Shown here one piece after another: positions 19,401-45,003 of a DNA stretch of 64,000 bases. The translations under genes were made by a program, and so were the position numbers. The first letter of the stretch is position 1, and every line of letters starts with the position of its first letter. This DNA is from Macrostomum lignano. Its lineage: Eukaryota. Location of the stretch: NCBI GenBank assembly GCA_002269645.1, contig NIVC01003197.1:1-64000 (forward strand). The letters run 5' to 3'. The notes beneath the pieces were generated by a model. The model did not search any database, had not been told where the DNA came from, and saw only the letters and a program-made list of their open reading frames with translations.

Positions 19401-19461
19401 ATCCGATAACAGTATTTAAATGTCCCGTGACCAGCCGAACCCCGCGTGTTCGCCTCTGCAG

Positions 19462-21095: not shown

Positions 21096-22007
21096 GCAGG
21101 CATTAAAGCTCCCAAACTTAATGGGTGTACACGCTAAAATGGGCAGTAGCTGTCTGAAATTGTAGAGGCCTCTGTGCTGTACTATTTTATTTGTCCCAGC
21201 TTTACTCATGCTGCGTGTACTTTTAGCGCTTTAATTAATTTGTTATCGATAGCTGGCTATTTTGTAGCAGTTTATTCCAGGCTTCTTAATACAAACTGAA
21301 TAAATATTAATATATGTTTACTTTTGTGTAGTGACCTGTTATCCAAAGCTTGAAATGCTAATTATTATCCCGATTATTTCAACCCATAATTCACTTTTTT
21401 CATCGCAATCCATCGATTCTACGGCCGAGGCTTGAATTGATTTTTCCTTCCAGACTCTTGCCTGGCAATTAATTTATGTCTGCAATATTTTTAAAGTACA
21501 TAGAATTGGGTAGGATGCCAATAAGTTTTCATCTGCACTTTTTCTATTAGAACTTCTGCATGTCTTTATGGCTTTGTTGTTTCTTTTTAAAATTAACGGA
21601 ACAAGACTGCCAAACCTGAATGCCAGTTCCGATACAATAAGCCTGTAACCCTGTCGCCATATTGCTGCCCATTTGCCACCTTACAAAGTTGATGGTGTGA
21701 AATTTCAAGCTCATGAAGTTTCGCTTTAGTAAAAGTAACAAAAAATTTCCACGACTTGAAGCAATTGCTGTCTTCGCAGATGTGAAATTTCGAGCTTGTA
21801 AAGTGAATTTTGTGAAATCCACCGTTGGATTTTGTCGGTCTGGGCCATAGACTAAGCTGGTAGAAACCTGCCCCTCGGCCTCCGGAGTAAACTCCGTATA
21901 TAAAAAATTCGGTACATGTATATGTGGATTGATGTTACAAGTGCACTATGGGTATTTATAAAATTCCACAGGATAATGGCTCCAACAAAGCTTGATTTTG
22001 AATGAAA

Positions 22008-22013: not shown

Positions 22014-22030
22014 TGAGTTTACAAGCAAAC

Positions 22031-22128
22031 CAGCTGCAAATAGATGAACACAGAAATACTCTAGCTAAATGCGCTCCAGCTGCAAATAGATGAACACAGA
22101 AATACTCTAGCTAAATGCGCTCCAGCTG
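22031..22128. repeat. 46 bp tandem duplication in METTL16 3' UTR
   Basis: CCAGCTGCAAATAGATGAACACAGAAATACTCTAGCTAAATGCGCT at 22031 and 22077, plus a partial third copy. Confidence 0.9.
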
Positions 22129-22149
22129 CACAACACAGCTAACTGAAGG

Positions 22150-24433
22150 TCATTCCTTGGCTGCCTCCTCCGCACTGACCGAAGCCGCCTTCGCCTTCTG
22201 ATGCTCGTCCTCGGCTTGCTCCTCGTCAGAGGGTGCCGCAGCGGCGTACAGATTCTTCAGGCACAGCAGCAGCTGGTGCATGAGCTCCCTGCCGGAGCCA
22301 TCCAACCAGCTCAGCTGCATCTCGATGACGCCGCTGTCGTTATAATCCAGCGCCAGATTCGCCACCAGCACCGGCGGCTCTTTCGGCTGAGTCGCCTGCT
22401 TGGACGGGCTGGATGAGGCCGTCAGCTTGCGCGGGCTGCGCTGACGACGCGGCTGCGGGGGTCCTCGGCCGGCATTGGCGGCGGCGGCTTCCAGCCGGGG
22501 ACGCTTCTCTGCAGGCGGCGAGCAGCCCTCTGTGTCTTTCTCGCTAAATTTGCTGTCACTTTCGCTCTTGATGACATCGTGACCTTTAACGTTGTCTTGA
22601 CCTTTATTGTCACTATGACCTTCAGCGACGTCATGATCTTTTGAGTCACTTTGACCGTCAGCAGAGTCATGACCTTTATTGTCTTTTTGACCTTTAGCGA
22701 CGTCGCAATCTTTATCACCCTGACCTCCGATGACGTCATCGGAAAGTCGGCTAACTCCCTGGCCCCTGATGCTGTCGCTTTCACTCAGCTCACTTTCCTG
22801 GCTTCGATTAGCGGCGTCGCCCTTGTCGGCGCCTGCTGCCGGATGCCGGCGCCGATGCCGCTGGCGGGTCCAGGTGACCTCCTTGGCCGACAGGCGCAAC
22901 CGGCGGCCCGCGGCGCCCTGCTTGTTCAGCTGGTCCCAGCAGTCGATGCGCAGTCGCCGCTTGAGAACCCGCTTGCACCAGGCGAACACGGAGTCCAGGC
23001 TGTAGTCCGGGCTGGGCTGGCCGGCCTCGCCAGCTGGCCGCTGCGGCAGCTGCATCGTCAGCGGCGGCCGGGACTGCAGCTTGCGCCGCTTGAACTCCGA
23101 CATTGGAAAACTGACGCCAGACTGGAAAGTCCAGCCAATGCCCCAGCGCATGACGCGGCCCTGGCAGAACTCGTAGGTGCCGTAGCTGGCAACGCCGAGC
23201 CGCTCCAGCAGGCGCTTCAGCGGCTTCAGGGACGGCTTGCGGCCCAGCATGGAGGTGAAGACGCGGCAGCGGTCGCGGTGTCGGCTTGACTCCTGCGCGA
23301 TGCGGCTCACGAACATCACCTCGCCGCCTGAGGAGAAACTCTCGACGCTGGCTGCCGTGCTGGCAGACATTGGAGGGTGCCGGCTGTCCGATCTGCAGAG
23401 GGGGGGGGATGTGCTCTCTGCTGGTGTTGAGCTATGAGAATCCATCACTTGATTTGAGCAGGCTCTGAGCACCCCTCACCTGGTGTTAAGCAGGCCCTCA
23501 GCACCCCTCACCTGGTGTTAAGCAGGCCCTCAGCACCCCTCACCTGGTGTTAAGCAGGCCCTCAGCACCCCTCACCTGGTGTTAAGCAGGCCCTGAGCAC
23601 CCCTCACCTGGTGTTAAGCAGGCCCTGAGCACCCCTCACCTGGTGTTAAGCAGGCCCTGAGCACCCCTCACCTGGTGTTAAGCAGGCCCTGAGCACCCCT
23701 CACCTGGTGTTAAGCAGGCCCTGAGCCTCGGCCGCATCCGCAAAGAACGGTGGGTTGCACATGCAGAAGTCGAACTGCTCCTGCGGCTCCGCCAGACTCA
23801 ATGGAAACTCGAGCGGCCCGGCGTCCGCCGGCGCCAACGCCACCCTGACGCGATCCTGCAGGCCGTTGCGGGCGACATTCTCCTCAGCATAGGCTGCGTT
23901 TCTCTTGTCCACTTCAGTGGCTACAAACCGCCAGCTGGGGTGGCAGCGGACCACCAGAAGCGGGTAGATGCAGCAGCTGCCAGTGCCGATGTCGATGCCG
24001 CGAAGAGTGCTGCTGGAGGCTGCGTGTGTGAACAGGGAGACGCATTTTACTCGGGATTTCCGCTTCTCTTGACAACTAAAGCCTTCAATTTTTCATTTTG
24101 AGACTCATCTTAAACAAACCTCGACTCACCCTCGGGAGCGGAGCAATCAACGCCCAGGATGTCCTCCAGCCAGTGCAGGTAGTTCAGCCGCAGCGGCAGC
24201 GTCGGGATCAGGCGGTCCAGCGGCAGCTCCACGCGCAGCTGGAAGTCGCGCTCTAGCAGGGCTCGGGTGAGAGCGGCCAGCTGGTGGGGCAGCTTGAAGT
24301 TGACCACAACTCGGCCGCGATCGTCCAGCTGGCAGGCGGCCGCAAAGCTGGGGTTGTCGCGGGCCAGCTGGGCAAAGTCCGGCTTCTCCCGGCGGTAGCG
24401 ATTGCGATGGTGCATGAAGCGGTTCATGGACAT
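22150..24433 (-). CDS. METTL16: U6 snRNA/MAT2A m6A methyltransferase METTL16; exons 24433-24130, 24019-23704, 23392-22150 (~620 aa)
   Basis: All junctions are GT-AG and in phase. Motifs MHHRNRY..KPDF, RLIPTLPLRLNYLHWLEDIL, GIDIGTGSCCIYPLL, ATEVD, catalytic FDFCMCNPPFF, GGEVMFV, EFCQGRVMRWGIGW, and C-terminal VCR/KA1-like segments (TWTRQRHRRR; EMQLSWLDGSGRELMHQL). Confidence 0.96.
23467..23725. repeat. 32 bp minisatellite spanning the METTL16 exon 2/intron 2 junction, 8 copies
   Basis: Minus-strand unit CTCAGGGCCTGCTTAACACCAG|GTGAGGGGTG = 22 exonic + 10 intronic nt. Confidence 0.97.
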
Positions 24434-24464
24434 GGCTGCGGGCTGGGCGGCTTGAGACTGGAGC

Positions 24465-27400
24465 TGGGTCTTTATCCAGCGTGATTCTGAGTTTTTACCC
24501 AACCAATTATCCAAGCCTGATTCTCGGTCTTTATCCAGCCTGATTCTGGGTCTTTATCCAGTCTGATTCTGGGTCTTTATCCAGCCTGATTCTGGGTCTT
24601 TACCCAACCAATTATCCAAGCCTGATTCTGGGTCTTTATCCAGCCTGATTCTGGGTCTTTATCCAGTCTGATTCTGGGTCTTTATCCCAGCCTGATTCTG
24701 GGTCTTTATCCAGCCTGATTCTGGGTCTTTATCCAGTCTGATTCTGGGTCTTTATCCAAGCCTGATTCTGGGTCTTTATCCAGCCTGATTCTGGGTCTTT
24801 ATCCAGCCTGATTCTGGGTCTTTATCCCAGCCTGATTCTGGGTCTTTATCCAACCTGATTCTGGGTTTTTATCCAACCAATTATCCAAGCCTGATTCTGG
24901 GTCTTTATCCGACTTAATTCTGGGTCTTTATCCAACCTGATTCTGGGTCTTTATCCAGCCTGATTCTGGGTTTTTATCCAACCAATTATCCAAGCCTGAT
25001 TCTGGGTCTTTATCCCAGCCTGATTCTGGGTCTTTATCCCAGCCTGATTCTGGGTCTTTATCCAGCCTGATTCTGAGTTTTTACCCAACCAATTATCCAA
25101 GCCTGATTCTGGGTCTTTATCCAGCCTGATTCTGGGTCTTTATCCAGTCTGATTCTGGGTCTTTATCCCAGCCTGATTCTGGGTCTTTATCCAGCCTGAT
25201 TCTGAGTTTTTACCCAACCAATTATCCAAGCCTGATTCTGGGTCTTTATCCAGCCTGATTCTGGGTCTTTATCCAGTCTGATTCTGGGTCTTTATCCCAG
25301 CCTGATTCTGGGTCTTTATCCAGCCTGATTCTGAGTTTTTACCCAACCAATTATCCAAGCCTGATTCTGGGTCTTTATCCCAGCCTGATTCTGGGTCTTT
25401 ATCCAGCCTGATTCTGGGTCTTTATCCAACCTGATTCTGGGTCTTTATCCCAGCCTGATTCTGGGTCTTTATCCAACCTGATTCTGGGTTTTTATCCAAC
25501 CAATTATCCAAGCCTGATTCTGGGTCTTTATCCGACTTAATTCTGGGTCTTTATCCAACCTGATTCTGGGTCTTTATCCCAGCCTGATTCTGGGTTTTTA
25601 TCCAACCAATTATCCAAGCCTGATTCTGGGTCTTTATCCCAGCCTGATTCTGGGTCTTTATCCAACCTGATTCTGGGTTTTTACCCAACCAATTATCCAA
25701 GCCTGATTCTGGGTCTTTATCCAGCCTGATTCTGGGTCTTTATCCAGTCTGATTCTGGGTCTTTATCCCAGCCTGATTCTGGGTCTTTATCCAACCTGAT
25801 TCTGGGTTTTTATCCAACCAATTATCCAAGTCTGATTCTGGGTCTCTATCCGACTTAATTCTGGGTCTTTATCCCAGCCTGATTCTGGGTCTTTATCCAA
25901 CCTGATTCTGGGTTTTTACCCAACCAATTATCCAAGCCTGATTCTGGGTCTTTATCCAGCCTGATTCTGGGTCTTTATCCAGTCTGATTCTGGGTCTTTA
26001 TCCCAGCCTGATTCTGGGTCTTTATCCAACCTGATTCTGGGTTTTTATCCAACCAATTATCCAAGCCTGATTCTGGGTCTCTATCCGACTTAATTCTGGG
26101 TCTTTATCCCAGCCTGATTCTGGGTCTTTATCCCAGCCTGATTCTGGGTCTTTACCCAGCCTGATTCTGGGTCTTTATCCAGCCTGTTTCTGGGTCTTTA
26201 TCCAGCCTGATTCTGGGTCTTTATCCCAGCCTGATTCTGGGTCTTTATCCAACCTGATTCTGGGTTTTTATCCAACCAATTATCCAAGCCTGATTCTGGG
26301 TCTCTATCCGACTTAATTCTGGGTCTTTATCCCAGCCTGATTCTGGGTCTTTATCCCAGCCTGATTCTGGGTCTTTACCCAGCCTGATTCTGGGTCTTTA
26401 TCCAGCCTGTTTCTGGGTCTTTATCCCAGCCTGATTCTGGGTCTTTATCCAATCTGATTCTGGGTTTTTACCCAACCAATTATCCAAGCCTGATTCTGGG
26501 TCTCTATCCGACTTAATTCTGGGTCTTTATCCCAGCCTGATTCTGGGTCTTTATCCCAGCCTGATTCTGGGTCTTTATCCCAGCCTGATTCTGGGTCTTT
26601 ACCCAGCCTGATTCTGGGTCTTTATCCCAGCCTGATTCTGGGTTTTTACCCAACCAATTATCCAAGCCTGATTCTGGGTCTTTATCCAGCCTGATTCTGG
26701 GTCTTTATCCCAGCCTGATTCTGGGTCTTTATCCCAGCCTGATTCTGGGTTTTTACCCAACCAATTATCCAAGCCTGATTCTGGGTCTTTATCCAGCCTG
26801 ATTCTGGGTCTTTATCCAACCTGATTCTGGGTTTTTATCCAACCAATTATCCAAGCCTGATTCTGGGTCTCTATCCGACTTAATTCTGGGTCTTTATCCC
26901 AGCCTGATTCTGGGTCTTTATCCAACCTGATTCTGGGTCTTTACCCAGCCTGATTCTGGGTCTTTATCCAGCCTGTTTCTGGGTCTTTATCCAGCCTGAT
27001 TCTGGGTCTTTATCCCAGCCTGATTCTGGGTCTTTATTCAACCTGATTCTGGGTTTTTATCCAACCAATTATCCAAGCCTGATTCTGGGTCTCTATCCGA
27101 CTTAATTCTGGGTCTTTATCCCAGCCTGATTCTGGATCTTTATCCAAGCCTGATTCTGGGTCTTTACCCAGCCTGATTCTGGGTCTTTATCCAGCCTGTT
27201 TCTGGTCCTTATCCAGCCTGATTCTGGGTCTTTATCCAGCCTGATTCTGGGTCTTTATCCAGCCTGATTCTGGGTCTTTATCCCAGCCTGATTCTGGGTC
27301 TTTATCCAATCTGATTCTGGTTTTTACCCAACCAATTATCCAAGCCTGATTCTGGGTCTCTATCCGACTTAATTCTGGGTCTTTATCCCAGCCTGATTCT

Positions 27401-30400
27401 GGGTCTTTATCCCAGCCTGATTCTGGGTCTTTATCCCAGCCTGATTCTGGTTCTTTATCCAGCCTGATTCTGAGTTTTTACCCAACCAATTATCCAAGCC
27501 TGATTCTGGGTCTTTACCCAGCCTGATTCTGGGTCTTTATCCAGTCTGATTCTGGGTCTTTATCCCAGCCTGATTCTGGGTCTTTATCCAGCCTGATTCT
27601 GAGTTTTTACCCAACCAATTATCCAAGCCTGATTCTGGGTCTTTATCCAGCCTGATTCTGGGTCTTTATCCAGTCTGATTCTGGGTCTTTATCCCAGCCT
27701 GATTCTGGGTCTTTATCCAGCCTGATTCTGAGTTTTTACCCAACCAATTATACAAGCCTGATTCTGGGTCTTTATCCAGCCTGATTCTGGGTCTTTATCC
27801 AGTCTGATTCTGGGTCTTTATCCAGCCTGATTCTGGGTCTTTACCCAACCAATTATCCAAGCCTGATTCTGGGTCTTTATCCAGCCTGATTCTGGGTCTT
27901 TATCCAGTCTGATTCTGGGTCTTTATCCCAGCCTGATTCTGGGTCTTTATCCAGCCTGATTCTGAGTTTTTACCCAACCAATTATCCAAGCCTGATTCTG
28001 GGTCTTTATCCAGCCTGATTCTGGGTCTTTATCCAGCCTGATTCTGGGTCTTTATCCCAGCCTGATTCTGGGTCTTTATCCAACCTGATTCTGGGTTTTT
28101 ATCCAACCAATTATCCAAGCCTGATTCTGGGTCTTTATCCGACTAAATTCTGGGTCTTTATCCAACCTGATTCTGGGTCTTTATCCCAGCCTGATTCTGG
28201 GTTTTTATCCAACCAATTATCCAAGCCTGATTCTGGGTCTTTATCCCAGCCTGATTCTGGGTCTTTATCCCAGCCTGATTCTGGGTCTTTATCCAGCCTG
28301 ATTCTGAGTTTTTACCCAACCAATTATCCAAGCCTGATTCTGGGTCTTTATCCAGCCTGATTCTGGGTCTTTATCCAGTCTGATTCTGGGTCTTTATCCC
28401 AGCCTGATTCTGGTCTTTATCCAGCCTGATTCTGAGTTTTTACCCAACCAATTATCCAAGCCTGATTCTGGGTCTTTATCCAGCCTGATTCTGGGTCTTT
28501 ATCCAGTCTGATTCTGGGTCTTTATCCCAGCCTGATTCTGGGTCTTTATCCAGCCTGATTCTGAGTTTTTACCCAACCAATTATCCAAGCCTGATTCTGG
28601 GTCTTTATCCCAGCCTGATTCTGGGTCTTTATCCAGCCTGATTCTGGGTCTTTATCCAACCTGATTCTGGGTCTTTATCCCAGCCTGATTCTGGGTCTTT
28701 ATCCAGCCTGATTCTGAGTTTTTACCCAACCAATTATCCAAGCCTGATTCTGGGTCTTTATCCCAGCCTGATTCTGGGTCTTTATCCAACCTGATTCTGG
28801 GTTTTTATCCAACCAATTATCCAAGCCTGATTCTGGGTCTTTATCCGACTTAATTCTGGGTCTTTATCCAACCTGATTCTGGGTCTTTATCCCAGCCTGA
28901 TTCTGGGTTTTTATCCAACCAATTATCCAAGCCTGATTCTGGGTCTTTATCCCAGCCTGATTCTGGGTCTTTATCCAACCTGATTCTGGGTTTTTACCCA
29001 ACCAATTATCCAAGCCTGATTCTGGGTCTTTATCCAGCCTGATTCTGGGTCTTTATCCAGTCTGATTCTGGGTCTTTATCCCAGCCTGATTCTGGGTCTT
29101 TATCCAACCTGATTCTGGGTTTTTATCCAACCAATTATCCAAGCCTGATTCTGGGTCTCTATCCGACTTAATTCTGGGTCTTTATCCCAGCCTGATTCTG
29201 GGTCTTTATCCAACCTGATTCTGGGTTTTTACCCAACCAATTATCCAAGCCTGATTCTGGGTCTTTATCCAGCCTGATTCTGGGTCTTTATCCAGTCTGA
29301 TTCTGGGTCTTTATCCCAGCCTGATTCTGGGTCTTTATCCAACCTGATTCTGGGTTTTTATCCAACCAATTATCCAAGCCTGATTCTGGGTCTCTATCCG
29401 ACTTAATTCTGGGTCTTTATCCCAGCCTGATTCTGGGTCTTTACCCAGCCTGATTCTGGGTCTTTATCCAGCCTGTTTCTAGGTCTTTATCCAGCCTGAT
29501 TCTGGGTCTTTATCCCAGCCTGATTCTGGGTCTTTAACCAACCTGATTCTGGGTTTTTATCCAACCAATTATCCAAGCCTGATTCTGGGTCTCTATCCGA
29601 CTTAATTCTGGGTCTTTATCCCAGCCTGATTCTGGGTCTTTATCCCAGCCTGATTCTGGGTCTTTACCCAGCCTGATTCTGGGTCTTTATCCAGCCTGTT
29701 TCTGGGTCTTTATCCCAGCCTGATTCTGGGTCTTTATCCAACCTGATTCTGGGTTTTTATCCAACCAATTATCCAAGCCTGATTCTGGGTCTCTATCCGA
29801 CTTAATTCTGGGTCTTTATCCCAGCCTGATTCTGGGTCTTTATCCAACCTGATTCTGGGTTTTTACCCAACCAATTATCCAAGCCTGATTCTGGGTCTTT
29901 ATCCAGCCTGATTCTGGGTCTTTATCCAGTCTGATTCTGGGTCTTTATCCCAGCCTGATTCTGGGTCTTTATCCAACCTGATTCTGGGTTTTTATCCAAC
30001 CAATTATCCAAGCCTGATTCTGGGTCTCTATCCGACTTAATTCTGGGTCTTTATCCCAGCCTGATTCTGGGTCTTTATCCCAGCCTGATTCTGGGTCTTT
30101 ACCCAGCCTGATTCTGGGTCTTTATCCAGCCTGTTTCTGGGTCTTTATCCAGCCTGATTCTGGGTCTTTATCCCAGCCTGATTCTGGTCTTTATCCAACC
30201 TGATTCTGGGTTTTTATCCAACCAATTATCCAAGCCTGATTCTGGGTCTCTATCCGACTTAATTCTGGGTCTTTATCCCAGCCTGATTCTGGGTCTTTAT
30301 CCCAGCCTGATTCTGGGTCTTTACCCAGCCTGATTCTGGGTCTTTATCCAGCCTGTTTCTGGGTCTTTATCCCAGCCTGATTCTGGGTCTTTATCCAATC

Positions 30401-33400
30401 TGATTCTGGGTTTTTACCCAACCAATTATCCAAGCCTGATTCTGGGTCTCTATCCGACTTAATTCTGGGTCTTTATCCCAGCCTGATTCTGGGTCTTTAT
30501 CCCAGCCTGATTCTGGGTCTTTATCCCAGCCTGATTCTGGGTCTTTACCCAGCCTGATTCTGGGTCTTTATCCCAGCCTGATTCTGGGTTTTTACCCAAC
30601 CAATTATCCAAGCCTGATTCTGGGTCTTTATCCAGCCTGATTCTGGGTCTTTATCCCAGCCTGATTCTGGGTCTTTATCCCAGCCTGATTCTGGGTTTTT
30701 ACCCAACCAATTATCCAAGCCTGATTCTGGTCTTTATCCAGCCTGATTCTGGGTCTTTATCCAACCTGATTCTGGGTTTTTATCCAACCAATTATCCAAG
30801 CCTGATTCTGGGTCTCTATCCGACTTAATTCTGGGTCTTTATCCCAGCCTGATTCTGGGTCTTTATCCAACCTGATTCTGGGTCTTTACCCAGCCTGATT
30901 CTGGGTCTTTATCCAGCCTGTTTCTGGGTCTTTATCCAGCCTGATTCTGGGTCTTTATCCCAGCCTGATTCTGGGTCTTTATTCAACCTGATTCTGGGTT
31001 TTTATCCAACCAATTATCCAAGCCTGATTCTGGGTCTCTATCCGACTTAATTCTGGGTCTTTATCCCAGCCTGATTCTGGATCTTTATCCAAGCCTGATT
31101 CTGGGTCTTTACCCAGCCTGATTCTGGGTCTTTATCCAGCCTGTTTCTGGGTCCTTATCCAGCCTGATTCTGGGTCTTTATCCAGCCTGATTCTGGGTCT
31201 TTATCCAGCCTGATTCTGGGTCTTTATCCCAGCCTGATTCTGGGTCTTTATCCAATCTGATTCTGGGTTTTTACCCAACCAATTATCCAAGCCTGATTCT
31301 GGGTCTCTATCCGACTTAATTCTGGGTCTTTATCCCAGCCTGATTCTGGGTCTTTATCCCAGCCTGATTCTGGGTCTTTATCCCAGCCTGATTCTGGTTC
31401 TTTATCCAGCCTGATTCTGAGTTTTTACCCAACCAATTATCCAAGCCTGATTCTGGGTCTTTATCCAGCCTGATTCTGGGTCTTTATCCAGTCTGATTCT
31501 GGGTCTTTATCCCAGCCTGATTCTGGGTCTTTATCCAGCCTGATTCTGAGTTTTTTTCCAACCAATTATCCAAGCCTGATTCTGGGTCTTTATCCAGCCT
31601 GATTCTGGGTCTTTATCCAGTCTGATTCTGGGTCTTTATCCCAGCCTGATTCTGGGTCTTTATCCAGCCTGATTCTGAGTTTTTACCCAACCAATTATCC
31701 AAGCCTGATTCTGGGTCTTTATCCAGCCTGATTCTGGGTTTTTATCCAGTCTGATTCTGGGTCTTTATCCCAGCCTGATTCTGGGTCTTTATCCAACCTG
31801 ATTCTGGGTTTTTATCCAACCAATTATCCAAGCCTGATTCTGGGTCTTTATCCGACTTAATTCTGGGTCTTTATCCAACCTGATTCTGGGTCTTTATCCC
31901 AGCCTGATTCTGGGTTTTTATCCAACCAATTATCCAAGCCTGATTCTGGGTCTTTATCCGACTTAATTCTGGGTCTTTATCCAACCTGATTCTGGGTTTT
32001 TACCCAACCAATTATCCAAGCCTGATTCTGGGTCTTTATCCAGCCTGATTCTGGGTCTTTATCCAGTCTGATTCTGGGTCTTTATCCCAGCCTGATTCTG
32101 GGTCTTTATCCAACATGATTCTGGGTTTTTATCCAACCAATTATCCAAGCCTGATTCTGGGTCTCTATCCGACTTAATTCTGGGTCTTTATCCCAGCCTG
32201 ATTCTGGATCTTTATCCAACCTGATTCTGGGTTTTTACCCAACCAATTATCCAAACCTGATTCTGGGTCTTTATCCAGCCTGATTCTGGGTCTTTATCCA
32301 GTCTGATTCTGGGTCTTTATCCCAGCCTGATTCTGGGTCTTTATCCAACCTGATTCTGGGTTTTTATCCAACCAATTATCCAAGCCTGATTCTGGGTCTC
32401 TATCCGACTTAATTCTGGGTCTTTATCCCAGCCTGATTCTGGGTCTTTATCCCAGCCTGATTCTGGGTCTTTACCCAGCCTGATTCTGGGTCTTTATCCA
32501 GCCTGTTTCTGGGTCTTTATCCAGCCTGATTCTGGGTCTTTATCCCAGCCTGATTCTGGGTCTTTATCCAACCTGATTCTGGGTTTTTATCCAACCAATT
32601 ATCCAAGCCTGATTCTGGGTCTCTATCCGACTTAATTCTGGGTCTTTATCCCAGCCTGATTCTGGGTCTTTATCCAGCCTGATTCTGGGTCTTTATCCCA
32701 GCCTGATTCTGGGTCTTTACCCAGCCTGATTCTGGGTCTTTATCCAGCCTGTTTCTGGTCCTTATCCAGCCTGATTCTGGGTCTTTATCCAGCCTGATTC
32801 TGGGTCTTTATCCAGCCTGATTCTGGGTCTTTATCCAACCTGATTCTGGGTCTTTATCCAATCTGATTCTGGGTTTTTACCCAACCAATTATCCAAGCCT
32901 GATTCTGGGTCTCTATCCGACTTAATTCTGGGTCTTTATCCCAGCCTGATTCTGGGTCTTTATCCCAGCCTGATTCTGGGTCTGTATCCCAGCCTGATTC
33001 TGGGTCTTTACCCAGCCTGATTCTGGTCTTTATCCAGCCTGTTTCTGGGTCTTTATCCAGCCTGATTCTGGGTCTTTATCCCAGCCTGATTCTGGGTCTT
33101 TATCCAACCTGATTCTGGGTTTTTACCCAACCAATTATCCAAGCCTGATTCTGGGTCTTTATCCGACTTAATTCTGGGTCTTTATCCCAGCCTGATTCTG
33201 GGTCTTTATCCCAGCCTGATTCTGGGTCTTTATCCCAGCCTGATTCTGGGTCTTTATCCCAGCCTGTTTCTGGGTCTTTATCCCAGCCTGATTCTGGGTC
33301 TTTATCCAACCTGATTCTGGGTTTTTACCCAACCAATTATCCAAGCCTGATTCTGGGTCTTTATCCAGCCTGATTCTGGGTCTTTATCCAGTCTGATTCT

Positions 33401-36006
33401 GGGTCTTTATCCCAGCCTGATTCTGGGTCTTTATCCAACCTGATTCTGGGTTTTTATCCAACCAATTATCCAAGCCTGATTCTGGGTCTCTATCCGACTT
33501 AATTCTGGGTCTTTATCCCAGCCTGATTCTGGGTCTTTATCCCAGCCTGATTCTGGGTCTTTACCCAGCCTGATTCTGGGTCTTTATCCAGCCTGTTTCT
33601 GGGTCTTTTTCCAGCCTGATTCTGGGTCTTTATCCCAGCCTGATTCTGGGTCTTTATCCAACCTGATTCTGGGTTTTTATCCAACCAATTATCCAAGCCT
33701 GATTCTGGGTCTCTATCCGACTTAATTCTGGGTCTTTATCCCAGCCTGATTCTGGGTCTTTATCCCAGCCTGATTCTGGGTCTTTATCCCAGCCTGATTC
33801 TGGGTCTTTACCCAGCCTGATTCTGGGTCTTTATCCAGCCTGTTTCTGGGTCCTTATCCAGCCTGATTCTGGGTCTTTATCCAGCCTGATTCTGGGTCTT
33901 TATCCAGCCTGATTCTGGGTCTTTATCCAACCTGATTCTGGGTCTTTATCCAATCTGATTCTGGGTTTTTACCCAACCAATTATCCAAGCCTGATTCTGG
34001 GTCTCTATCCGACTTAATTCTGGGTCTTTATCCCAGCCTGATTCTGGGTCTTTATCCCAGCCTGATTCTGGGTCTGTATCCCAGCCTGATTCTGGTTCTT
34101 TACCCAGCCTGATTCTGGGTCTTTATCCAGCCTGTTTCTGGGTCTTTATCCAGCCTGATTCTGGGTCTTTATCCCAGCCTGATTCTGGGTCTTTATCCAA
34201 CCTGATTCTGGGTTTTTACCCAACCAATTATCCAAGCCTGATTCTGGGTCTTTATCCGACTTAATTCTGGGTCTTTATCCCAGCCTGATTCTGGGTCTTT
34301 ATCCCAGCCTGATTCTGGGTCTTTATCCCAGCCTGATTCTGGGTCTTTATCCCAGCCTGTTTCTGGGTCTTTATCCCAGCCTGATTCTGGGTCTTTATCC
34401 AACCTGATTCTGGGTTTTTATCCAACCAATTATCCAAGCCTGATTCTGGGTCTTTATCGAGCCTGATTCTGGGTCTTTATCCAGTCTGATTCTGGGTCTT
34501 TATCCCAGCCTGATTCTGGGTCTTTATCCAACCTGATTCTGGGTTTTTATCCAACCAATTATCCAAGCCTGATTCTGGGTCTCTATCCGACTTAATTCTG
34601 GGTCTTTATCCCAGCCTGATTCTGGGTCTTTATCCCAGCCTGATTCTGGGTCTTTACCCAGCCTGATTCTGGGTCTTTATCCAGCCTGTTTCTGGGTCTT
34701 TATCCAGCCTGATTCTGGGTCTTTATCCCAGCCTGATTCTGGGTCTTTATCCAACCTGATTCTGGGTTTTTATCCAACCAATTATCCAAGCCTGATTCTG
34801 GGTCTCTATCCGACTTAATTCTGGGTCTTTATCCCAGCCTGATTCTGGGTCTTTATCCCAGCCTGATTCTGGGTCTTTATCCCAGCCTGATTCTGGGTCT
34901 TTACCCAGCCTGATTCTGGGTCTTTATCCAGCCTGTTTCTGGGTCCTTATCCAGCCTGATTCTGGGTCTTTATCCAGCCTGATTCTGGGTCTTTATCCCA
35001 GCCTGATTCTGGGTCTTTATCCAACCTGATTCTGGGTCTTTATCCAATCTGATTCTGGGTTTTTACCCAACCAATTATCCAAGCCTGATTCTGGGTCTCT
35101 ATCCGACTTAATTCTGGGTCTTTATCCCAGCCTGATTCTGGGTCTTTATCCCAGCCTGATTCTGGGTCTTTACCCAGCCTGATTCTGGGTCTTTATCCAG
35201 CCTGTTTCTGGGTCTTTATCCAGCCTGATTCTGGGTCTTTATCCCAGCCTGATTCTGGGTCTTTATCCAACCTGATTCTGGGTTTTTACCCAACCAATTA
35301 TCCAAGCCTGATTCTGGGTCTCTATCCGACTTAATTCTGGGTCTTTATCCCAGCCTGATTCTGGGTCTTTATCCCAGCCTGATTCTGGGTCTTTATCCCA
35401 GCCTGATTCTGGGTCTTTATCCCAGCCTGTTTCTGGGTCTTTATCCCAGCCTGATTCTGGGTCTTTATCCAACCTGATTCTGGGTCTTTATCCCAGCCTG
35501 ATTCTGGGTCTTTATCCAGCAGATTCTGGGTCTTTATCCCAGCCTGATTCTGGGTCTTTACCCAGCCTGATTCTGGGTCTTTATCCAACCTAATTCTGGG
35601 TCCTTATCCAGCCTGATTCTGGGTCTTTATCCAGCCTGATTCTGGGTCTTTATCCAGCCTGATTCTGGGTCTTTATCCCAGCCTGATTCTGGGTCTTTAT
35701 CCAATCTGATTCTGGGTTTTTACCCAACCAATTATCCAAGCCTGATTCTGGGTCTCTATCCGACTTAATTCTGGGTCTTTATCCCAGCCTGATTCTGGGT
35801 CTTTATCCCAGCCTGATTCTGGGTCTTTATCCCAGCCTGATTCTGGGTCTTTATCCCAGCCTGTTTCTGGGTCTTTATCCCAGCCTGATTCTGGGTCTTT
35901 ATCCCAGCCTGATTCTGGGTCTTTATCCCAGCCTGATTCTGGGTCTTTATCTCAGCCTGATTCTGGGTCTTTATCCCAGCCTGTTTCTGGGTCTTTATCC
36001 AATCTG
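24465..36006. repeat. 11.5 kb satellite of 23-24 bp units (CAGCCTGATTCTGGGTCTTTATC[C]) with longer variant units
   Basis: Continuous periodicity, with marker variants CCAACCAATTATCCAAG, CCGACTTAATTC and GCCTGTTTC. Lies between the XYLB 3' end and the METTL16 start. Confidence 0.97.
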
Positions 36007-36190
36007 AAGCTTAATCTCTATCTAACAAGAAGCTCTCCAATTTGATTATTTGAATCTGGGCCTCGATCCTACTTAAAGATTAGTTTCTATTTTATTCCCA
36101 ACATAAAGCTTAGCGCCTTTCTGTAACTGAAAATCAAATAAAAAATGTGGACTCTCATCACAGAAATTTATAATCAGTTCACATGCACCA

Positions 36191-36196
36191 TTTATT
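36191..36196 (-). terminator. Candidate polyadenylation signal of XYLB
   Basis: AATAAA on the minus strand ~150 nt after the XYLB stop. A second copy lies at ~36090. Confidence 0.5.
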
Positions 36197-36343
36197 GGAA
36201 AATCAGTCTAAACAAGAAAATCATCCCTAAAATCAAATAGAATTATTTACATAATTATAATGAAAGTCATGGTCCGTAGGGAAACGCTACCAGAACTTCC
36301 TATAACTAGCATTGCCAAAACTAAAATCAGCCTCTCAGCCGCA

Positions 36344-39300
36344 TCAAGCGGAGCCACCAAGTCGAGCGGCCTGCAGCTCAGCCGCCCTCGCCAGCAGGCC
36401 CGGAAATCGATCGCGCATCGACCGGTAAGCCGGCGCCGCTTTTGGCCTGGGTTCGAACGTCCTGGACTCGACTCCGGCGCCGCTGTCGGGCGGCAGAGAG
36501 GCGAGAAAATCGGCGCTTGGGCCGGCGAGAGCGCTGGCGCCAAGTAGAGCGGCGCCGAGGACAGCCGAGTTGCCCAGGCCGGGCTGGACAATCACCGGAG
36601 TAGCCAGGGCGTCAGCCAGCACCTGCGGAGCAGCTGGAGCTGTTGCAGCTGCCGACTCAACTACCGACTCAACTACTCATTCAGCCGCAGCATCTACTTT
36701 GAATTCATCTACCGAATATACTACCTATCTAGCTACCAGATTAACTACCGATCTAGCTACCACATCAACTACCGATTTATCTACCAGATCAACTACCGAT
36801 CTAGCTACCACATCAACTACCGATTTATCTACCAGATCAACTACCGATCTAGCTACCACATCAACTACCGATTTATCTACCAGATCAACTACCGATCTAG
36901 CTACCTCTATTTAACAACTGATACATCAGCAGCAACAGTGTATATTAACTAAATCAGCTTAGCTACTAAGCGCCGTCCCAAAGCCTGACCAACAGCAGCT
37001 CACCTGAGCCACCCGCGGATTGGCCGAGGCTCCCCCAGTGGCCAGCACCCTGGCGCCCGGCTCCCCGGGCCGGAAGCCGAGGCTCTCAGCAAACAGCCGC
37101 AGCGACATGGCGTGGCTCTCCAGACAGGCTCGAGCCTCGGCGGCCGGACCTTCGACAAAGTCAGCGCCGTCTGGCAGCGGCTCTCCGTCGGCGCCGAACC
37201 GGTAGCGACCCAGCGCGCCCTCCGGCACAATCTCCGGCGAGTCGAAGTACAGCCCGACGAGCCCGCCATTGCCGGGAGGCCGCGAGTCCAGCAGCCGGTC
37301 AAACTCGGCCCAGGAGCCGCCAGCGAACCGGTCCCTGATGGCCTCGCGGGTCAGCGCGCCGTTCTTAAGGCTGGTTGGGTTGGGGATTCGGCACTGAGCA
37401 AGGTCCTGGGCTCGAGCTCCAGTCAGCTGCTCACTAAGCCAGAGGACTCACACTGCAGCCAGCTGCTCAGCTAGCGGACTCACACTGCAGCCAGCTGCTC
37501 AGCTAGCGGACTCACACTGCAGTCAGCTGCTCAGCTAGCGGACTCACACTGCATGCAGCCAGTTGCTCAACTAGCGGACTCACACTGCAGCCAGCTGCTC
37601 AGCTAGCGGACTCACACTGCATGCAGCCAGCTGCTCAGCTAGCGGACTCACACTGCAGCCAGTTGCTCAGCTAGCGGACTCACACTGCAGCCAGCTGCTC
37701 AGCTAGCGGACTCACACTGCAGCCAGCTGCTCAGCTAGCGGACTCACACTGCAGCCAGTTGCTCAGCTAGCGGACTCACACAACAATAGGCATGCAGGAC
37801 TCGGTGTCCACAGCGCAGGCCATGACCACGCAGCCCAGGCTTGGCAGGGCGGCCCCGGCGGGCAGGCAGCGGCAGGTTGACCTCAGCAGGGCGCAGCTGG
37901 AGCTGCCCAGAGTGACGGCGAGGCAGCCCGGCTGCAGCCGCAGTCCGGCCAGCGTGGCCGGGTTGTCGCCGGTGAAGGCGGCCACGCGGCAGTCGGGCGA
38001 GAATCCCCACCGAGCAGAGAGGTAGGCCGACACCCGGCCGAGGATCGTGCGGCCAGGGACGATCGGGCCGAGGAGGCTCTGCGGGCGGGGAGATGAGGGA
38101 CTGAGGCTGGAGCCAGCTTATGTACAAGGTGGGGCAGGGGTCACTTGGAATCAGTCAGGCTCGGGAGTAGACTGTGAGGTCACTAGGGAGTAGACTGTGG
38201 GGTCACTAGGGAGTAGACTGTGGGGTCACTAGGGAGTAGACTGTGGGGTCACTAGGGAGTAGACTGTGGGGTCACTAGGGAGTAGACTGTGAGGTCACTA
38301 GGGAGTAGACTGTGGGGTCACTAGGGAGTAGACTGTGAGGTCACTAGGGAGTAGACTGTGGGGTCACTAGGGAGTAGACTGTGGGGTCACTAGGGAGTAG
38401 ACTGTGGGGTCACTAGGGAGTAGACTGTGGGTCACTAGGGAGTAGACTGTGGGGTCACTAGGAAGTAGACTGTGGGTCACTAGGGAGTAGACTGTGGGGT
38501 CACTAGGGAGTAGACTGTGGGGTCACTAGGGAGTAGACTGTGGGTCACTAGGGAGTAGACTGTGGGGTCACTAGGGAGTAGACTGTGGGGTCACTAGGGA
38601 GTAGACTGTGGGGTCACTAGGGAGTAGACTGTGGGTCACTAGGGAGTAGACTGTGGGGTCACTAGGAAGTAGACTGTGGGTCACTAGGGAGTAGACTGTG
38701 GGGTCACTAGGGAGTAGACTGTGGGGTCACTAGGAAGTAGACTGTGGGTCACTAGGGAGTAGACTGTGGGGTCACTAGGGAGCAGACTGTGGGTCACTAG
38801 GGAGTAGACTGTGGGGTCACTAGGGAGTAGACTGTGGGGTCACTAGGGAGTAGACTGTGGGTCACTAGGGAGTAGACTGTGGGGTCACTAGGGAGTAGAC
38901 TGTGGGTCACTAGGGAGTAGACTGCAGAGTATATTACGATTCAGTAGAGTAATTTTTTAAGTGGCGACAGATGAGAAGCGGACAAGCAGGACTCAATGCT
39001 CAACGGTCTGCACCTCCAGTCCGGGCTGCACGAACTCGCACAGACGGGGCACCCAGGCTCTCTCGGCCAGCGACATCAGATTCATGCCGGACCCGTCGGC
39101 CTCGTCGATGCTGGCGTAGTCGCCGAGGAATAGCGAGGCAGCAAAACTGCTGACCAGGGAGACTCGCTCGGTGTCGGCCAGAGTGCCGGCGAGGCGCTGC
39201 TTCATCAACTGGGCCGCCGTGTAGCGGTGGAAGGCGCGGGCGCCGGTCAGGGCGGCCAGGGCCTGCGGGGTGCGGTGCGGCGAGTAGGGAGGAATCTGCT

Positions 39301-42300
39301 GGCGGCCCAAGCTGAGGGTCTGGGAGGCTGTCTGAGGGTCTGGGAGGCTGGCTGAGGGTCTGGGAGGGGGTCTAGGAGGCTTTCTGAGGGTGTAGGAGGC
39401 TGGTTGAGGGTCTGGGAGGCTGGCTGAGGGTCTGGGAGGGGGTCTGGGAGGCTTTCTGAGGGTGTGGGAGGCTGTCTGAGGGTCTGGGAGGCTGGCTGAG
39501 GGTCTGGGAGGGGGTCTAGGAGGCTTTCTGAGGGTGTGGGAGGCTGGTTGAGGGTCTGGGAGGCTGGCTGAGGGTCTGGGAGGCTGGCTGAGGGTCTGGG
39601 AGGCTGGCTGAGGGTCTAGGAGGCTGGCTGAGGGTCTAGGAGGCTGGCTGAGGGTCTGAGAGGCTGTCTGAAGGTTTGGGAGGCTGGTTGAGGGTCTGGG
39701 AGGCTGGCTGAGGGTCTAGGAGGCTGGCTGAGGGTCTGGGAGGCTGGCTGAAGGTTTGGGAGGCTGGTTGAGGGTCTGGGAGGCTGGCTGAGGGTCTAGG
39801 AGGCTGGCTGAGGGTCTGGGAGGCTGGCTGAAGGTTTGGGAGGCTGGTTGAGGGTCTGGGAGGCTGGCTGAGGGTCCAGGAGGCTGTCTGAGGGTCTTGG
39901 AGGCTGGCTGAAGGTTTGGAAGGCTGGCAGCCAAGACTGAGGGTCTGGGAGGCTGGCGGCCCAGCAGCTAAGGATTCAATACCGCAGGTTCGCAGCAACC
40001 AAGAGTTCAATCAAGACGAACCTCCGGGCCGCCAGCAAAGGCCTCGAGCTGGGCGCACTGCTCGCCGGTGCTGGAGTCCATCCACACTGGCGAGTCGGCG
40101 GTGCTGAAGCAGGCGGCCAGCTGCTCGGCCATGGGCAGCTCCGGCTTCAGCTGGCGAAGCGTGTCGCGCGCTCTGGTGCGCCAGTAGACGCTGCCGTGCT
40201 GCTGCCCGGAGCCGCAGATGACGGCGGCCTGGCTGAATTCAACGCCGCGGGCCTTCAGCTGGGCGAGCAGGCGGTCCAGCGCCTCCACCCACATCAGCGT
40301 CGGGGAGGTGATGGTGGCACCATCTGGGTGGACGCGCACGCCGCCTTTGGTTCTGCGAGCAGTTTTTTGAGACGATTCTGACTGCTTTTAGAAGAACAGT
40401 CTAGCAACCACACAGCAACCAGGTGCGAATCCTACTCACTTGTAATGCGGAAGAGCTTCATCGAATTTTAGGAATTCTTCAAAAAAGATTTCCCCAGTAG
40501 TCAGGCCAACTCCAATGGCTTTTACCTGTTAGTTTTTGAAATATGCTTTGAAGACATTTCTGATTGGGAAGATTCAAATACTTAAAGCTATGTCATACTA
40601 TTTTTGACACAATGGCATTAGCATTTTAAACTAAAATCTAATAAGTATCTAGTCAAGTTATAACTGGAGCATACTAATTAGGTTTTTAATTTGTCCCACT
40701 TGTATTTTGTTCCTATATTGTTTTATACACCAAAAACATTGGCATAAATTAGCATTCCAAAATGTGTCAACTTTGAAGGAAGACATTTCTAACATATATG
40801 CAACCTTCTGGCACCTAGATTGCTACTGGTCTTGTTAATTTATATTTATTATTAAAATATATTAAATGATCTTCAGTGTATGATCATTATCGTACAATAC
40901 AATATGCCTAAAAGAGCTCAGACATACTCAGACTTATTCTTATTATTGTTGGTCTATTTAAAGCTTTAGAACCTATTAAGCAAAAACCTATGATATTCTA
41001 AGTTCAACTGAATGGTATGATTTGCCATTGACAATATGCCAATGCCAATAATAGCTAGCTAACTAATACTGTAGCTTAGTTGTTAATACCTAAGACCAGA
41101 GCAAGATATACCAGCTCAATGTTAGACTCATTGACTATGATAGCAAGTCAACCTATCTAATAGAAAATCCTTAATTATCTCCTATTTATCTTTAGATTAC
41201 TATAACTTACTTATTGATTATTATCTTTGATAGGCCTATTTTAGGCCTATAGACCTAATTTCTGCTTTTTGCTAAGAAATTCTACTAATAATTTCTGCTT
41301 ATTGCTTCCCTTTCCTTCTATAAAGACCAAATCATACTTTGCTTTATTTAATTACTGAGTATAATAAAAAAATAATAGGCCTAGGTTGGGGTCCTAGATA
41401 GCTAAAAAGTCAAAGGAAATAACTTGTTTAGGAAAGGGCTTCATTTATGTATATTTATATTGATTCACCTACATGTATTTTTTATCATAGGGCCTATTAC
41501 AATTAATTTATATATATATATAAATTTTAGCCACAGCCCTAATTTTTTATATGTTTAGCAATACCTACCAACATACATGCGCAACTGCTGGCCGAGCTGG
41601 CCGATCCGGCCACCATAAATCGTGGCTGACCAGGGGTAAGTCGCAAAATTGAGTTGACCAAAAACAGAAAAACACAAGAACCAAGAAAGAAAGGCAACAG
41701 GAAAGCGAAAAAAGAGTGGTTCAAGGAAAAATGGTGAAGCAAAAGAAAAACAAGTCGCATAAGAAGCAAACTAAGTCGCAAAAAGGATCAGGTAAGTCGC
41801 AACAGGAGCAACTAAGTCGCAAAAAGGATCAGGTAAGTCGCAATAGGAGCAACTAAGTTGCAAAAAGGATCAGGTAAGTCGCAATAGGAGCAACTAAGTC
41901 GCAAAAAGGATCAGGTAAGTTGCAACAGGAGCAACTAAGTCGCAAAAAGGATCAGGTAAGTCGCAATAGGAGCAACTAAGTCGCAAAAAGGATCAGGTAA
42001 GTCGCAATAGGAGCAACTAAGTCGCAAAAAGGATCAGGTAAGTCGCAAAAGGAGCAAACTAAGTCGCAAAAAGGATCAGGTAAGTCGCATAAGAAGCAAA
42101 CTAAGTCGCATTTTTGGTCAAAACTAAGTCGCACGGCCAGCGTAATTTCAGAGGTTGCGCATATATGCCTACCAATCCTATTTATTTAGAAAAATTGATT
42201 TGTTGGTTAAATAATTATTTGTCTTTTGAGGAAAAGTATCTAGCTTTGTTTTTTTGTTCAATTGTTGGCTAGGAGCCAAAAAAGAAAGTCTTTTATTGCA

Positions 42301-44677: not shown

Positions 44678-45003
44678 TCAATCTGCCTAAAAGCACAAGC
44701 TTGCTTACTAACAACTTCGAATTTCGAATTTCGAATAAATCAGTCACTGAGTCAGTCAGTTTCTGTAAAAAGATTGGTATTACAAGACAGACTTTTAAGC
44801 TTTATTACTTCATTCTTAAATTCAATTTTTTAACCAGCACTAGGCCTATAGACAGACAGAAAGTAGTGACAGTGAAGTACTTACTGGGCGTGGGAACAAA
44901 GTAGACTGCAAACCACACACCACGTAACACCAACACACAGCGTCACAACAACATCAACACAACACGTGATCGTGAAACTTTGCATTTCAAACCTTTCTTA
45001 GAA

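What the first reader, a model, noticed from the sequence alone, without database searches (positions are those of the whole stretch)
24433..36344. METTL16 has no visible promoter: candidate XYLB->METTL16 trans-spliced operon with an 11.5 kb satellite spacer
Seen: XYLB and METTL16 are on the same strand. Between the XYLB poly(A) signal (36191) and the METTL16 ATG (24433) there is under 200 bp of unique DNA, then 11.5 kb of satellite, then ~31 nt of leader. On the minus strand the satellite ends exactly at ...AAAGACCCAG|CTCCAG, an acceptor-like AG with no convincing upstream donor. XYLB likewise has TTTTAGGCAG only 5 nt before its ATG. Established: flatworms use spliced-leader trans-splicing and polycistronic transcription. 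Inference: a dicistronic unit whose intercistronic region expanded into a satellite, with the terminal repeat unit providing the trans-splice acceptor.
Basis: partly seen in the sequence, partly recalled or inferred. Interest (0 to 1): 0.7.

Follow-up and report, generated by a model that had tools for sequence, protein, structure and literature searches.

The report
Flatworm operon with satellite-filled spacer
In the flatworm Macrostomum lignano, the xylulokinase and METTL16 genes sit head-to-tail with an 11.5 kb tandem repeat between them, and this is most likely a stretched copy of a two-gene trans-spliced operon of a kind already described for this species.

Summary
The window is Macrostomum lignano contig NIVC01003197.1, positions 1-64000, from the Mlig_3_7 assembly.

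On the minus strand, XYLB ends at 36344, with AATAAA signals at 36196-36191 and 36096-36091. About 190 nt of unique DNA follow. Then comes an 11,537-nt array of 23/24-nt units (36000-24464), a 30-nt leader, and the METTL16 ATG at 24433.

Two other assembly copies have the same XYLB, satellite, METTL16 order with identical array junctions. Their arrays are only about 1.0 kb and 1.3 kb, the latter with a 3-kb transposon inside it.

In the 1-kb copy, the GenBank annotation names the genes Mlig012716g1 and g2. I read this as two genes cut from one RNA-seq-assembled transcriptional unit.

In the window, the annotated METTL16 5' end (24442) follows GCCCAG, 9 nt before the ATG.

A 2021 paper already reports that repeats inflate operon spacers in this species.

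The operon reading is therefore well supported for the gene pair. Co-transcription across this copy's 11.5 kb is unproven, because no reads were available. This is an extreme member of a known kind, of modest interest.

The parts
36344..44677 (-). XYLB (xylulokinase) coding region. It has 7 exons: 44677-44633, 40525-40440, 40352-40022, 39262-39014, 38078-37780, 37370-37004 and 36622-36344. It encodes 551 aa. GenBank BOX15_Mlig027496g1 (partial) covers it from exon 2 onwards.
   Evidence: Exons were found by exact matching to PAA52691.1/P0260 plus exon 1, then refined at splice sites. The cluster representative carries FGGY_N and FGGY_C domains.
44678..44692 (-). Acceptor-like sequence just upstream of the XYLB ATG: TTTTAG|GCAG|ATTGA. 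TTTTAG is conserved in all three copies. GGCAG is GGCTG in L001.
36191..36196 (-). First AATAAA poly(A) signal of XYLB, conserved in all three copies.
36091..36096 (-). Second AATAAA, about 90 nt before the satellite, also conserved.
36001..36190 (-). Unique part of the XYLB-METTL16 spacer, about 190 nt. It has no GT[AG]AG donor. Its last ~60 nt already resemble degenerate satellite units.
24464..36000 (-). Minisatellite of 11,537 nt. The unit on the transcribed strand is AAAGACCCAGAATCAGGCTGG(G)AT, 23 or 24 nt, organised in higher-order blocks of about 106-129 nt around an irregular unit, GGCTTGGATAATTGGTTGGGTAAA, which occurs 71 times. The same array is 968 nt in L001, where the irregular unit occurs once, and about 1.3 kb in L003.
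24434..24463 (-). Unique 30-nt leader, CTCCAG|TCTCAAG|CCGCCCAG|CCCGCAG|CC, followed by the ATG. It contains four AGs; two more lie in the last repeat unit. The annotated 5' end of Mlig031447g1 is 24442, right after GCCCAG| (AG at 24444-24443). CTCCAG| (24463-24458) matches the published trans-splice motif [T/C]TNCAG.
22150..24433 (-). METTL16 coding region. It has 3 exons: 24433-24130, 24019-23704 and 23392-22150. It encodes 620 aa and corresponds to GenBank BOX15_Mlig031447g1 (PAA52690.1).
23457..23726 (-). A 32-nt minisatellite in METTL16 intron 2. Its unit contains the exon-2 end and the 5' splice site (CAG|GTGAGG). There are 8 donor copies here, 36 in L001 and 12 in L003.

Best explanation
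XYLB and METTL16 form a two-gene spliced-leader operon of Macrostomum lignano.

**Proposed mechanism.** RNA polymerase II starts upstream of XYLB. The sequence shared by all three copies extends only about 330 nt upstream of the XYLB ATG. XYLB mRNA is cleaved and polyadenylated after one of the two AATAAA signals. The polymerase continues through the spacer. METTL16 mRNA is then matured by adding the 35-nt spliced leader at an AG in the short unique leader. The most likely site is GCCCAG| at 24444-24443, 9 nt before the ATG, which puts the leader's terminal AUG in frame.

**Origin of the spacer.** The intercistronic region was originally about 200 nt of unique sequence plus a roughly 1-kb private minisatellite. 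In this copy the minisatellite grew about ten-fold, by amplification of a ~106-129-nt block built around one irregular unit.

**Shown here.** The gene models, the array and its junctions, the three-copy comparison, the annotation names and the annotated 5' end.

**Inferred.** Spliced-leader addition at 24442, read-through of the array, and the direction of the size change.
For: 1. **Organism and biology.** The window is M. lignano. [quoted passage not shown] The authors state that repeats contribute substantially to operon intergenic distances. After subtracting repeats, distances between trans-spliced genes peak near 100 bp, and they use a 1-kb cut-off. Here the spacer minus the array is about 210 nt.
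2. **Annotation of the paralogous copy.** L001 has XYLB = BOX15_Mlig012716g1 and METTL16 = Mlig012716g2, with consecutive accessions PAA77431/2. Prefixes are assigned to RNA-seq-assembled transcriptional units. These units are then cut into genes at mapped trans-splice and poly(A) sites.
3. **Conserved arrangement.** All three copies keep the synteny and both array junctions.
4. **Annotated 5' end.** The window's METTL16 CDS is 5'-partial and starts at 24442, directly after an AG. That AG and its context are identical in all three copies.
5. **No alternative signals.** There is no canonical donor in the unique spacer. There is no RNA gene, tRNA or SL sequence in the window. The transcribed strand of the array has 0 matches to the YTNCAG trans-splice motif and only 2 AATAAA in 11.5 kb.
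6. **Ancestral irregular unit.** The irregular unit amplified 71 times here occurs once in L001's array, in a near-identical form (1 mismatch).
Against: - I could not examine any SL-containing read, poly(A) read, TSS map or long RNA read. The trans-splice site is inferred from where a partial CDS begins. Four of the twelve in-frame start positions in this AG-rich leader follow an AG, so that agreement alone is weak.
- In this copy the annotation has two separate units, Mlig027496 and Mlig031447. Nothing shows RNA crossing the 11.5 kb.
- The shared prefix in L001 could reflect StringTie merging neighbours through multi-mapped repeat reads.
- Its g2 protein starts at an internal Met (MCNPPFF). 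The underlying transcript model is therefore unspliced or odd.
- The array's transcribed strand carries 62 GGTAAA donor-like sites and 870 CAGs, which could disturb processing.
- After cleavage at the XYLB poly(A) site, 11.5 kb gives exonuclease-driven termination a long time to act. This last point rests on general knowledge.
Confidence: 0.6

Rival explanations
1. METTL16 has its own transcription start inside the satellite or in the ~190-nt unique spacer. It is an independently transcribed, SL-trans-spliced gene whose outron is repeat sequence, or the pair is a 'hybrid operon' with an internal promoter.
For: About 60% of trans-spliced M. lignano genes are not in operons. The window annotation has two separate units. 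A very long spacer makes read-through harder, which is general knowledge. L003 tolerates a 3-kb transposon inside the array.
Against: All three copies keep the same tight XYLB 3' end, array and leader arrangement. In the 1-kb copy, one unit prefix covers both genes. Nothing promoter-like can be recognised, and no promoter model for this species is available in these tools.
Confidence: 0.22
2. This particular copy is a poorly expressed or silent recent duplicate. Its transcript models come from reads of the other copies, so the 11.5-kb array has no functional consequence.
For: Its exons are 99.4-99.7% identical to L003 and 97.6-99.1% identical to L001, so reads multi-map. Homology to the other copies stops at about 19338 and about 45021/45575. 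The segment sits next to a 17.6-kb 238-nt satellite at the contig end. The assembly is known to hold duplicated chromosome material.
Against: The METTL16 reading frame here is fully intact at 620 aa, whereas L003's copy has a 1-nt deletion. The XYLB frame is intact as well.
Confidence: 0.12
3. METTL16 uses a conventional capped start within the last repeat units or the leader, with a very short 5' UTR and no trans-splicing.
For: The older ML2-based UniProt model A0A1I8HY98 (P0001) starts at 24469, which is 27 nt upstream of the Mlig_3_7 start. Some transcript or prediction evidence therefore reaches into the last repeat unit.
Against: Both model starts follow an AG. About 45% of genes conserved with human are trans-spliced in this species. 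The Mlig_3_7 model is flagged 5'-partial, which is what I would expect once the SL has been trimmed.
Confidence: 0.04
4. A non-coding first exon of METTL16 lies just upstream of the satellite (36000-36190), and the whole array is an 11.5-kb cis-spliced intron.
For: Introns at this locus are often filled with private minisatellites.
Against: No GT[AG]AG donor exists in 36340-36000. The only GT-AGG-like site, seen in L001 and L003, is absent from the window. This region is the XYLB 3' UTR and poly(A) region.
Confidence: 0.02

Closest known systems
Macrostomum lignano SL operons with repeat-inflated intergenic regions (Ustyantsev & Berezikov 2021, PMC8629364; transcriptional units of Wudarski et al. 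2017, PMC5730564)
   Same: The species and the single 35-nt SL are the same. The genes are adjacent on one strand. The repeat-subtracted spacer is about 210 nt, which falls in the published ~100-bp mode and below the 1-kb cut-off. The paralogous copy is already annotated as g1 and g2 of one unit.
   Different: The spacer is a single private minisatellite of 11.5 kb, far above the usual distances. In this copy the published annotation splits the pair into two units. The paper says this tends to happen in repeat-rich operon spacers.
Caenorhabditis elegans SL2-type operons and 'hybrid' operons with internal promoters (Blumenthal; cited)
   Same: The upstream gene is polyadenylated, a spacer follows, and the downstream gene is capped by trans-splicing. 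An internal promoter in a long spacer is the known alternative.
   Different: C. elegans spacers are about 100 nt and use a dedicated SL2. M. lignano has one SL, and here the spacer is 100 times longer and repetitive.
Operons of parasitic flatworms (Schistosoma mansoni and others; PMC12582326)
   Same: They use SL resolution of polycistrons, with intercistronic distances of median 99 bp and mean 233 bp. Chimeric gene models there imply spacers of up to several kb.
   Different: I saw no satellite-filled spacer described there. The XYLB-METTL16 pairing is not seen in the one outgroup I checked, Lingula, where the two genes lie on different scaffolds with other neighbours.

Membership tests
M. 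lignano SL operon (operational definition of Ustyantsev & Berezikov 2021) | Adjacent genes in the same orientation with no opposite-strand gene between them | tested here: met
   XYLB (36344-44677) and METTL16 (22150-24433) are both on the minus strand. Only the tandem array and about 220 nt of unique DNA lie between them. L001 and L003 have the same order.
M. lignano SL operon (operational definition of Ustyantsev & Berezikov 2021) | Repeat-subtracted intergenic distance below 1 kb | tested here: met
   From AATAAA at 36191 to the AG at 24443 is 11,748 nt. Subtracting the 11,537-nt array leaves about 210 nt. The criterion is given.
M. lignano SL operon (operational definition of Ustyantsev & Berezikov 2021) | The downstream gene carries the spliced leader (SL-containing reads at its 5' end) | tested here: inconclusive
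   No reads were accessible. Indirect evidence: the GenBank CDS of Mlig031447g1 is 5'-partial and begins at 24442, right after GCCCAG|. The Mlig_3_7 pipeline sets 5' ends at mapped SL sites where such data exist.
Polycistronic transcription unit (any SL operon) | One precursor RNA spans both genes | tested here: inconclusive
   For the paralogous copy L001, the two unrelated genes share the unit prefix Mlig012716 as g1 and g2. For the window copy, the two genes have different prefixes, Mlig027496 and Mlig031447. No RNA data were available here.
Polycistronic transcription unit (any SL operon) | No promoter between the genes | not testable with these tools
   This needs RAMPAGE/CAGE data or reporter constructs. 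The only promoter scan offered is a bacterial sigma-70 consensus.
C. elegans-type SL2 operon | A specialised downstream spliced leader and a ~100-nt U-rich spacer | tested here: not met
   M. lignano has a single SL. The spacer here is 11.7 kb, and its transcribed strand is 38% A, 27% G and only 16% T.
METTL16 / Methyltransf_10 family | Methyltransf_10 domain with the NPPF catalytic motif | tested here: met
   Pfam PF05971 at E=2.2e-74 over residues 4-297. The sequence contains CNPPFF. The best non-Macrostomum hits are animal METTL16 proteins.
Xylulokinase (FGGY family) | FGGY_N and FGGY_C domains, with closest relatives being animal xylulose kinases | tested here: met
   The cluster representative P0138 and all top hits carry PF00370 and PF02782. 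Identity to animal xylulokinases is 44-47% over more than 95% of the length.

The most novel reading that the evidence does not exclude
RNA polymerase II really does read through all 11.5 kb of satellite after XYLB 3'-end formation, and METTL16 of this copy is still matured by the spliced leader. That would be by far the longest intercistronic region I know of for a metazoan operon, and one made entirely of satellite. The three copies (1.0, 1.3+3 and 11.5 kb) would then be a natural series for asking how spacer length and repeat content affect expression of a downstream operon gene, and how termination is prevented.
Probability: 0.35. Interest if true: 0.5.

Novelty: new member of a known kind. 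Interest (0 to 1): 0.3.

Why it matters
Operon spacers in animals are normally about 100 nt, and how polymerase escapes termination after the upstream poly(A) site is still debated. M. lignano was already reported to have repeat-swollen operon spacers. This locus offers a concrete, extreme case, with two shorter sister copies in the same genome as built-in controls. It is also in an animal where transgenesis works. If the long copy is co-transcribed, it constrains models of termination and trans-splice site choice. If it is not, it shows how minisatellite growth can break an operon. As it stands it is an illustrative example, not a new principle.

Tried and rejected
1. **Transcript evidence from the protein collections.**
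   - A search with the METTL16 N-terminus found no Macrostomum fragments.
   - Exact look-ups of P0001 and of the exon-1 ORF found nothing.
   - The spliced 620-aa model was not accepted for look-up.
   - I therefore could not examine any SL-bearing transcript.
2. **Supplementary tables.** Files from Wudarski 2017, Grudniewska 2016 and Grudniewska 2018 held no entry for METTL16, XYLB or the four Mlig identifiers. No paper text mentions those identifiers.
3. **A cis-spliced upstream exon.** Rejected, because there is no GT[AG]AG donor in 36340-36000.
4. **An RNA gene or SL gene in the spacer or window.** Rejected by Rfam, ARAGORN and an SL pattern search, none of which found a match.
This is not conserved, because L001 and L003 have a 2-nt insertion. 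I do not use it as evidence.
6. **The YTNCAG motif scan over the whole window.** Uninformative: 421 matches against 398 expected. The only point I use is its absence from the array.
7. **The array as an assembly artefact of identical blocks.** Rejected. Self-alignment shows heterogeneous units at 85-90% identity, and the best long-range period of 3,945 nt reaches only 89.5%. Uncorrected long-read errors in the array cannot be excluded.
8. **Ancient synteny.** Not supported. In Lingula, XYLB and METTL16 are on different scaffolds.


Full report
**What the window is**

The METTL16 model I built from the minus strand has exons 24433-24130, 24019-23704 and 23392-22150 and encodes 620 aa. It carries a full Methyltransf_10 domain at E=2e-74. 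It matches a Macrostomum lignano UniRef entry exactly, except where that entry is mis-spliced.

The 90% cluster of that entry also holds two GenBank proteins of the Mlig_3_7 assembly. Fetching their contigs showed that locus L002 (NIVC01003197.1, 12150-34442, reversed) is 100% identical to window 34442-12150. The window is therefore positions 1-64000 of that contig.

**The observation**

Every coordinate statement checks out.

- XYLB has 7 exons: 44677-44633, 40525-40440, 40352-40022, 39262-39014, 38078-37780, 37370-37004 and 36622-36344.
- Its stop codon is followed by AATAAA at 36196-36191 and again at 36096-36091.
- About 190 nt of unique DNA follow.
- An 11,537-nt array then runs from 36000 to 24464. 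Tandem Repeats Finder gives periods of 23, 24, 47 and 129 nt and a score of 11,397.
- The commonest units on the transcribed strand are AAAGACCCAGAATCAGGCTGGGAT (115 copies) and AAAGACCCAGAATCAGGCTGGAT (54 copies).
- The array ends at ...GACCCAG|CTCCAG. Thirty nt later comes the METTL16 ATG.
- No GT[AG]AG donor lies between the XYLB stop and the array.
- No Rfam family, tRNA or spliced-leader sequence is present anywhere in the window.

**What is already published for this species**

Ustyantsev & Berezikov 2021 (PMC8629364) give the single 35-nt spliced leader, which ends in AUG.

- They estimate that 30% of genes are trans-spliced and 15% lie in operons.
- The top motif at trans-splice acceptors is [T/C]TNCAG, present in 44% of sites.
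[quoted passage not shown] After subtracting repeats, distances between trans-spliced genes peak near 100 bp. They use 1 kb as the operon threshold.

Wudarski et al. 2017 (PMC5730564) describe how assembled transcriptional units receive a name prefix. The TBONE pipeline then cuts them into genes at experimentally mapped trans-splice and poly(A) sites. They also report that simple and tandem repeats make up 15% of the genome.

**Evidence from the other copies**

The assembly holds three copies of the locus.

| Copy | Contig | Spacer between XYLB and METTL16 |
|---|---|---|
| Window | NIVC01003197.1 | 11,537-nt array |
| L001 | NIVC01000741.1 | 968-nt array |
| L003 | NIVC01000180.1 | 4,353 nt: about 1.3 kb of array plus a 3.0-kb insertion |

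- All three have XYLB, the same satellite, then METTL16. Both junctions of the array are identical, with GATTAAGCTTCAGATT|GGATAAAGACCC... at the 5' end and ...GACCCAG|CTCCAG at the 3' end.
- The L003 insertion has 109-nt and 86-nt inverted terminal repeats and a 679-aa ORF.
- Exon identity to the window is 99.4-99.7% for L003 and 97.6-99.1% for L001.
- The irregular unit GGCTTGGATAATTGGTTGGGTAAA occurs 71 times in the window's array. It occurs once, in near-identical form, in L001, and not at all in L003.

The simplest reading is an ancestral array of about 1 kb that grew about ten-fold in this copy, by amplification of a block around that unit. The alternative, a long ancestral array that shrank twice, is not excluded.

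**The annotation**

In L001 the two genes are BOX15_Mlig012716g1 (XYLB, PAA77431.1) and BOX15_Mlig012716g2 (METTL16, PAA77432.1). Two unrelated genes can share a unit prefix only if an assembled transcript, or the representative of a 95% cluster, contains both. That step is my inference from the naming rules.

In the window, XYLB is Mlig027496g1 and METTL16 is Mlig031447g1. The unit is split here, as the 2021 paper says tends to happen across repeat-rich operon spacers.

The window's METTL16 CDS is flagged partial and begins with PAA before MSMNRF, at 24442. The frame is open upstream to about 24517. A 5'-partial ORF must therefore start within 0-2 nt of the transcript's 5' end, and 24442 is the first base after GCCCAG|. 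This is what a trimmed spliced-leader junction would look like, but it is indirect. The leader holds six AGs in 40 nt, and four of the twelve in-frame positions follow one.

**Which acceptor**

- CTCCAG| fits the published motif exactly. ACCCAG| and GCCCAG| do not, but the motif is present at under half of real sites.
- L001 and L003 carry CTCCAGAG, a 2-nt insertion. The spacing and frame of the first two AGs relative to the ATG are therefore not conserved. GCCCAG|CCCGCAGCC-ATG is identical in all three copies.
- With the junction at 24442, the leader's terminal AUG is in frame and would add Met-Pro-Ala-Ala. This is an inference.
- I therefore favour the AG at 24444-24443. Minor sites upstream are possible. 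The older ML2-based model (P0001) starts at 24469, also right after an AG.
Only TTTTAG|, 9 nt before the ATG, is conserved. I found no evidence on whether XYLB is itself trans-spliced.

**Features of the array relevant to read-through**

On the transcribed strand the array has no YTNCAG match and two AATAAA. It also has 870 CAG and 62 GGTAAA, which is donor-like and lies in the irregular unit. Base composition is 38% A and 16% T.

The absence of the acceptor motif and the scarcity of poly(A) signals are compatible with an outron or spacer. The donor-like sites are a possible complication. They are nearly absent from the 1-kb arrays: 1 in L001 and 5 in L003's whole spacer.

**Assessment**

- **Gene pair as a family.** The operon reading is well supported, by the shared transcriptional unit in L001, the conserved tight architecture, the ~210-nt repeat-subtracted spacer and the AG-abutting partial 5' end. 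I put it at about 0.75.
- **This copy.** Whether polymerase crosses 11.5 kb of satellite is open. I put it at roughly even odds and give 0.6 to the overall statement.
- **Main rivals.** An internal start in the array or spacer, and low or no expression of this duplicate.
- **The duplicate's context.** The duplicated segment is bounded. Homology to the other copies ends at about 19338 and about 45021/45575. On one side it abuts a 17.6-kb 238-nt satellite at the contig end.
- **Outgroup.** XYLB and METTL16 are not neighbours in Lingula, so the pairing is not an old lophotrochozoan linkage.

**Novelty**

The general phenomenon is published, and the paralogous copy is already annotated as one unit. 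What is added here:

- This contig's two separately annotated genes are recognised as the same operon with a ten-fold expanded spacer.
- The three copies form a length series.
- The likely acceptor is placed more precisely.

This is an extreme member of a known kind, of modest interest.

Noticed in passing
window 23457-23726 (METTL16 intron 2) and 37437-37781 (XYLB intron 5); L001 10037-11290: Two introns carry 32-nt minisatellites whose unit begins at the 5' splice site, so the donor consensus is repeated in tandem. The units are GTGAGGGGTGCTCAGGGCCTGCTTAACACCAG (8, 36 and 12 donor copies in window, L001 and L003) and GTGAGTCCGCTAGCTGAGCAGCTGGCTGCAGT (10, 2 and 3 copies). Using any donor but the first would shift the frame. 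How the right one is chosen, and why arrays start at donors, is unexplained.
   Followed up: partly
window 36720-36905, 38163-38924, 39311-39928, 41752-42110: Every XYLB intron except the 87-nt intron 2 holds its own private minisatellite with a 20-48-nt unit, and copy numbers differ between the three assembly copies. In introns 3, 4 and 6 the array starts 90-95 nt after the donor. Several units contain pyrimidine-rich ...CAG stretches.
   Followed up: partly
window 1-17600: A 17.6-kb satellite with a ~238-nt unit, containing 68-71-nt sub-repeats, runs from the first base of the contig. It is unrelated to the 23-nt array.
   Followed up: no
window ~19338-20208 (+ strand); L001 13828-22574; L003 23108-24483: In L001 and L003 a TMEM62-like metallophosphoesterase gene converges on METTL16. 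In the window, homology to those copies stops at about 19338, and only a 185-aa 3' fragment is annotated (19461-20208). This copy of the locus is therefore a bounded segmental duplicate with a truncated neighbour.
   Followed up: partly
L003 15140-18181: A 3.0-kb element with inverted terminal repeats of 109 and 86 nt and a 679-aa ORF (no Pfam family above threshold) sits inside the spacer array of the third copy. In that copy METTL16 has a 1-nt deletion in a C-run of exon 1 and no annotated CDS. This could be a pseudogene or a long-read error.
   Followed up: partly
window 20292-21105 and 22030-22130: A 24-nt repeat (34 copies) and a 46-nt repeat (2.2 copies) lie in or just after the METTL16 3' UTR. 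The 46-nt repeat starts about 20 nt after the stop codon.
   Followed up: no
window 55678-57078 (- strand); 52500-53800 (+ strand); 46030-47115 (+ strand): Upstream of XYLB there are exons of a carbonic anhydrase gene (Pfam Carb_anhydrase, E=2e-26) on the minus strand. There are also frameshifted reverse-transcriptase fragments (RVT_1) on the plus strand and a 362-aa ORF with no family hit. The ~11 kb between the carbonic anhydrase gene and XYLB is not shared with the other copies beyond 45575.
   Followed up: partly
L001 10001 (start of PAA77432.1): The GenBank protein for the L001 METTL16 (Mlig012716g2) starts at an internal Met (MCNPPFF), although exons 1 and 2 are intact in the DNA. The underlying transcript model probably retains intron 1, which would fit a precursor-like transcriptional unit.
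   Followed up: no
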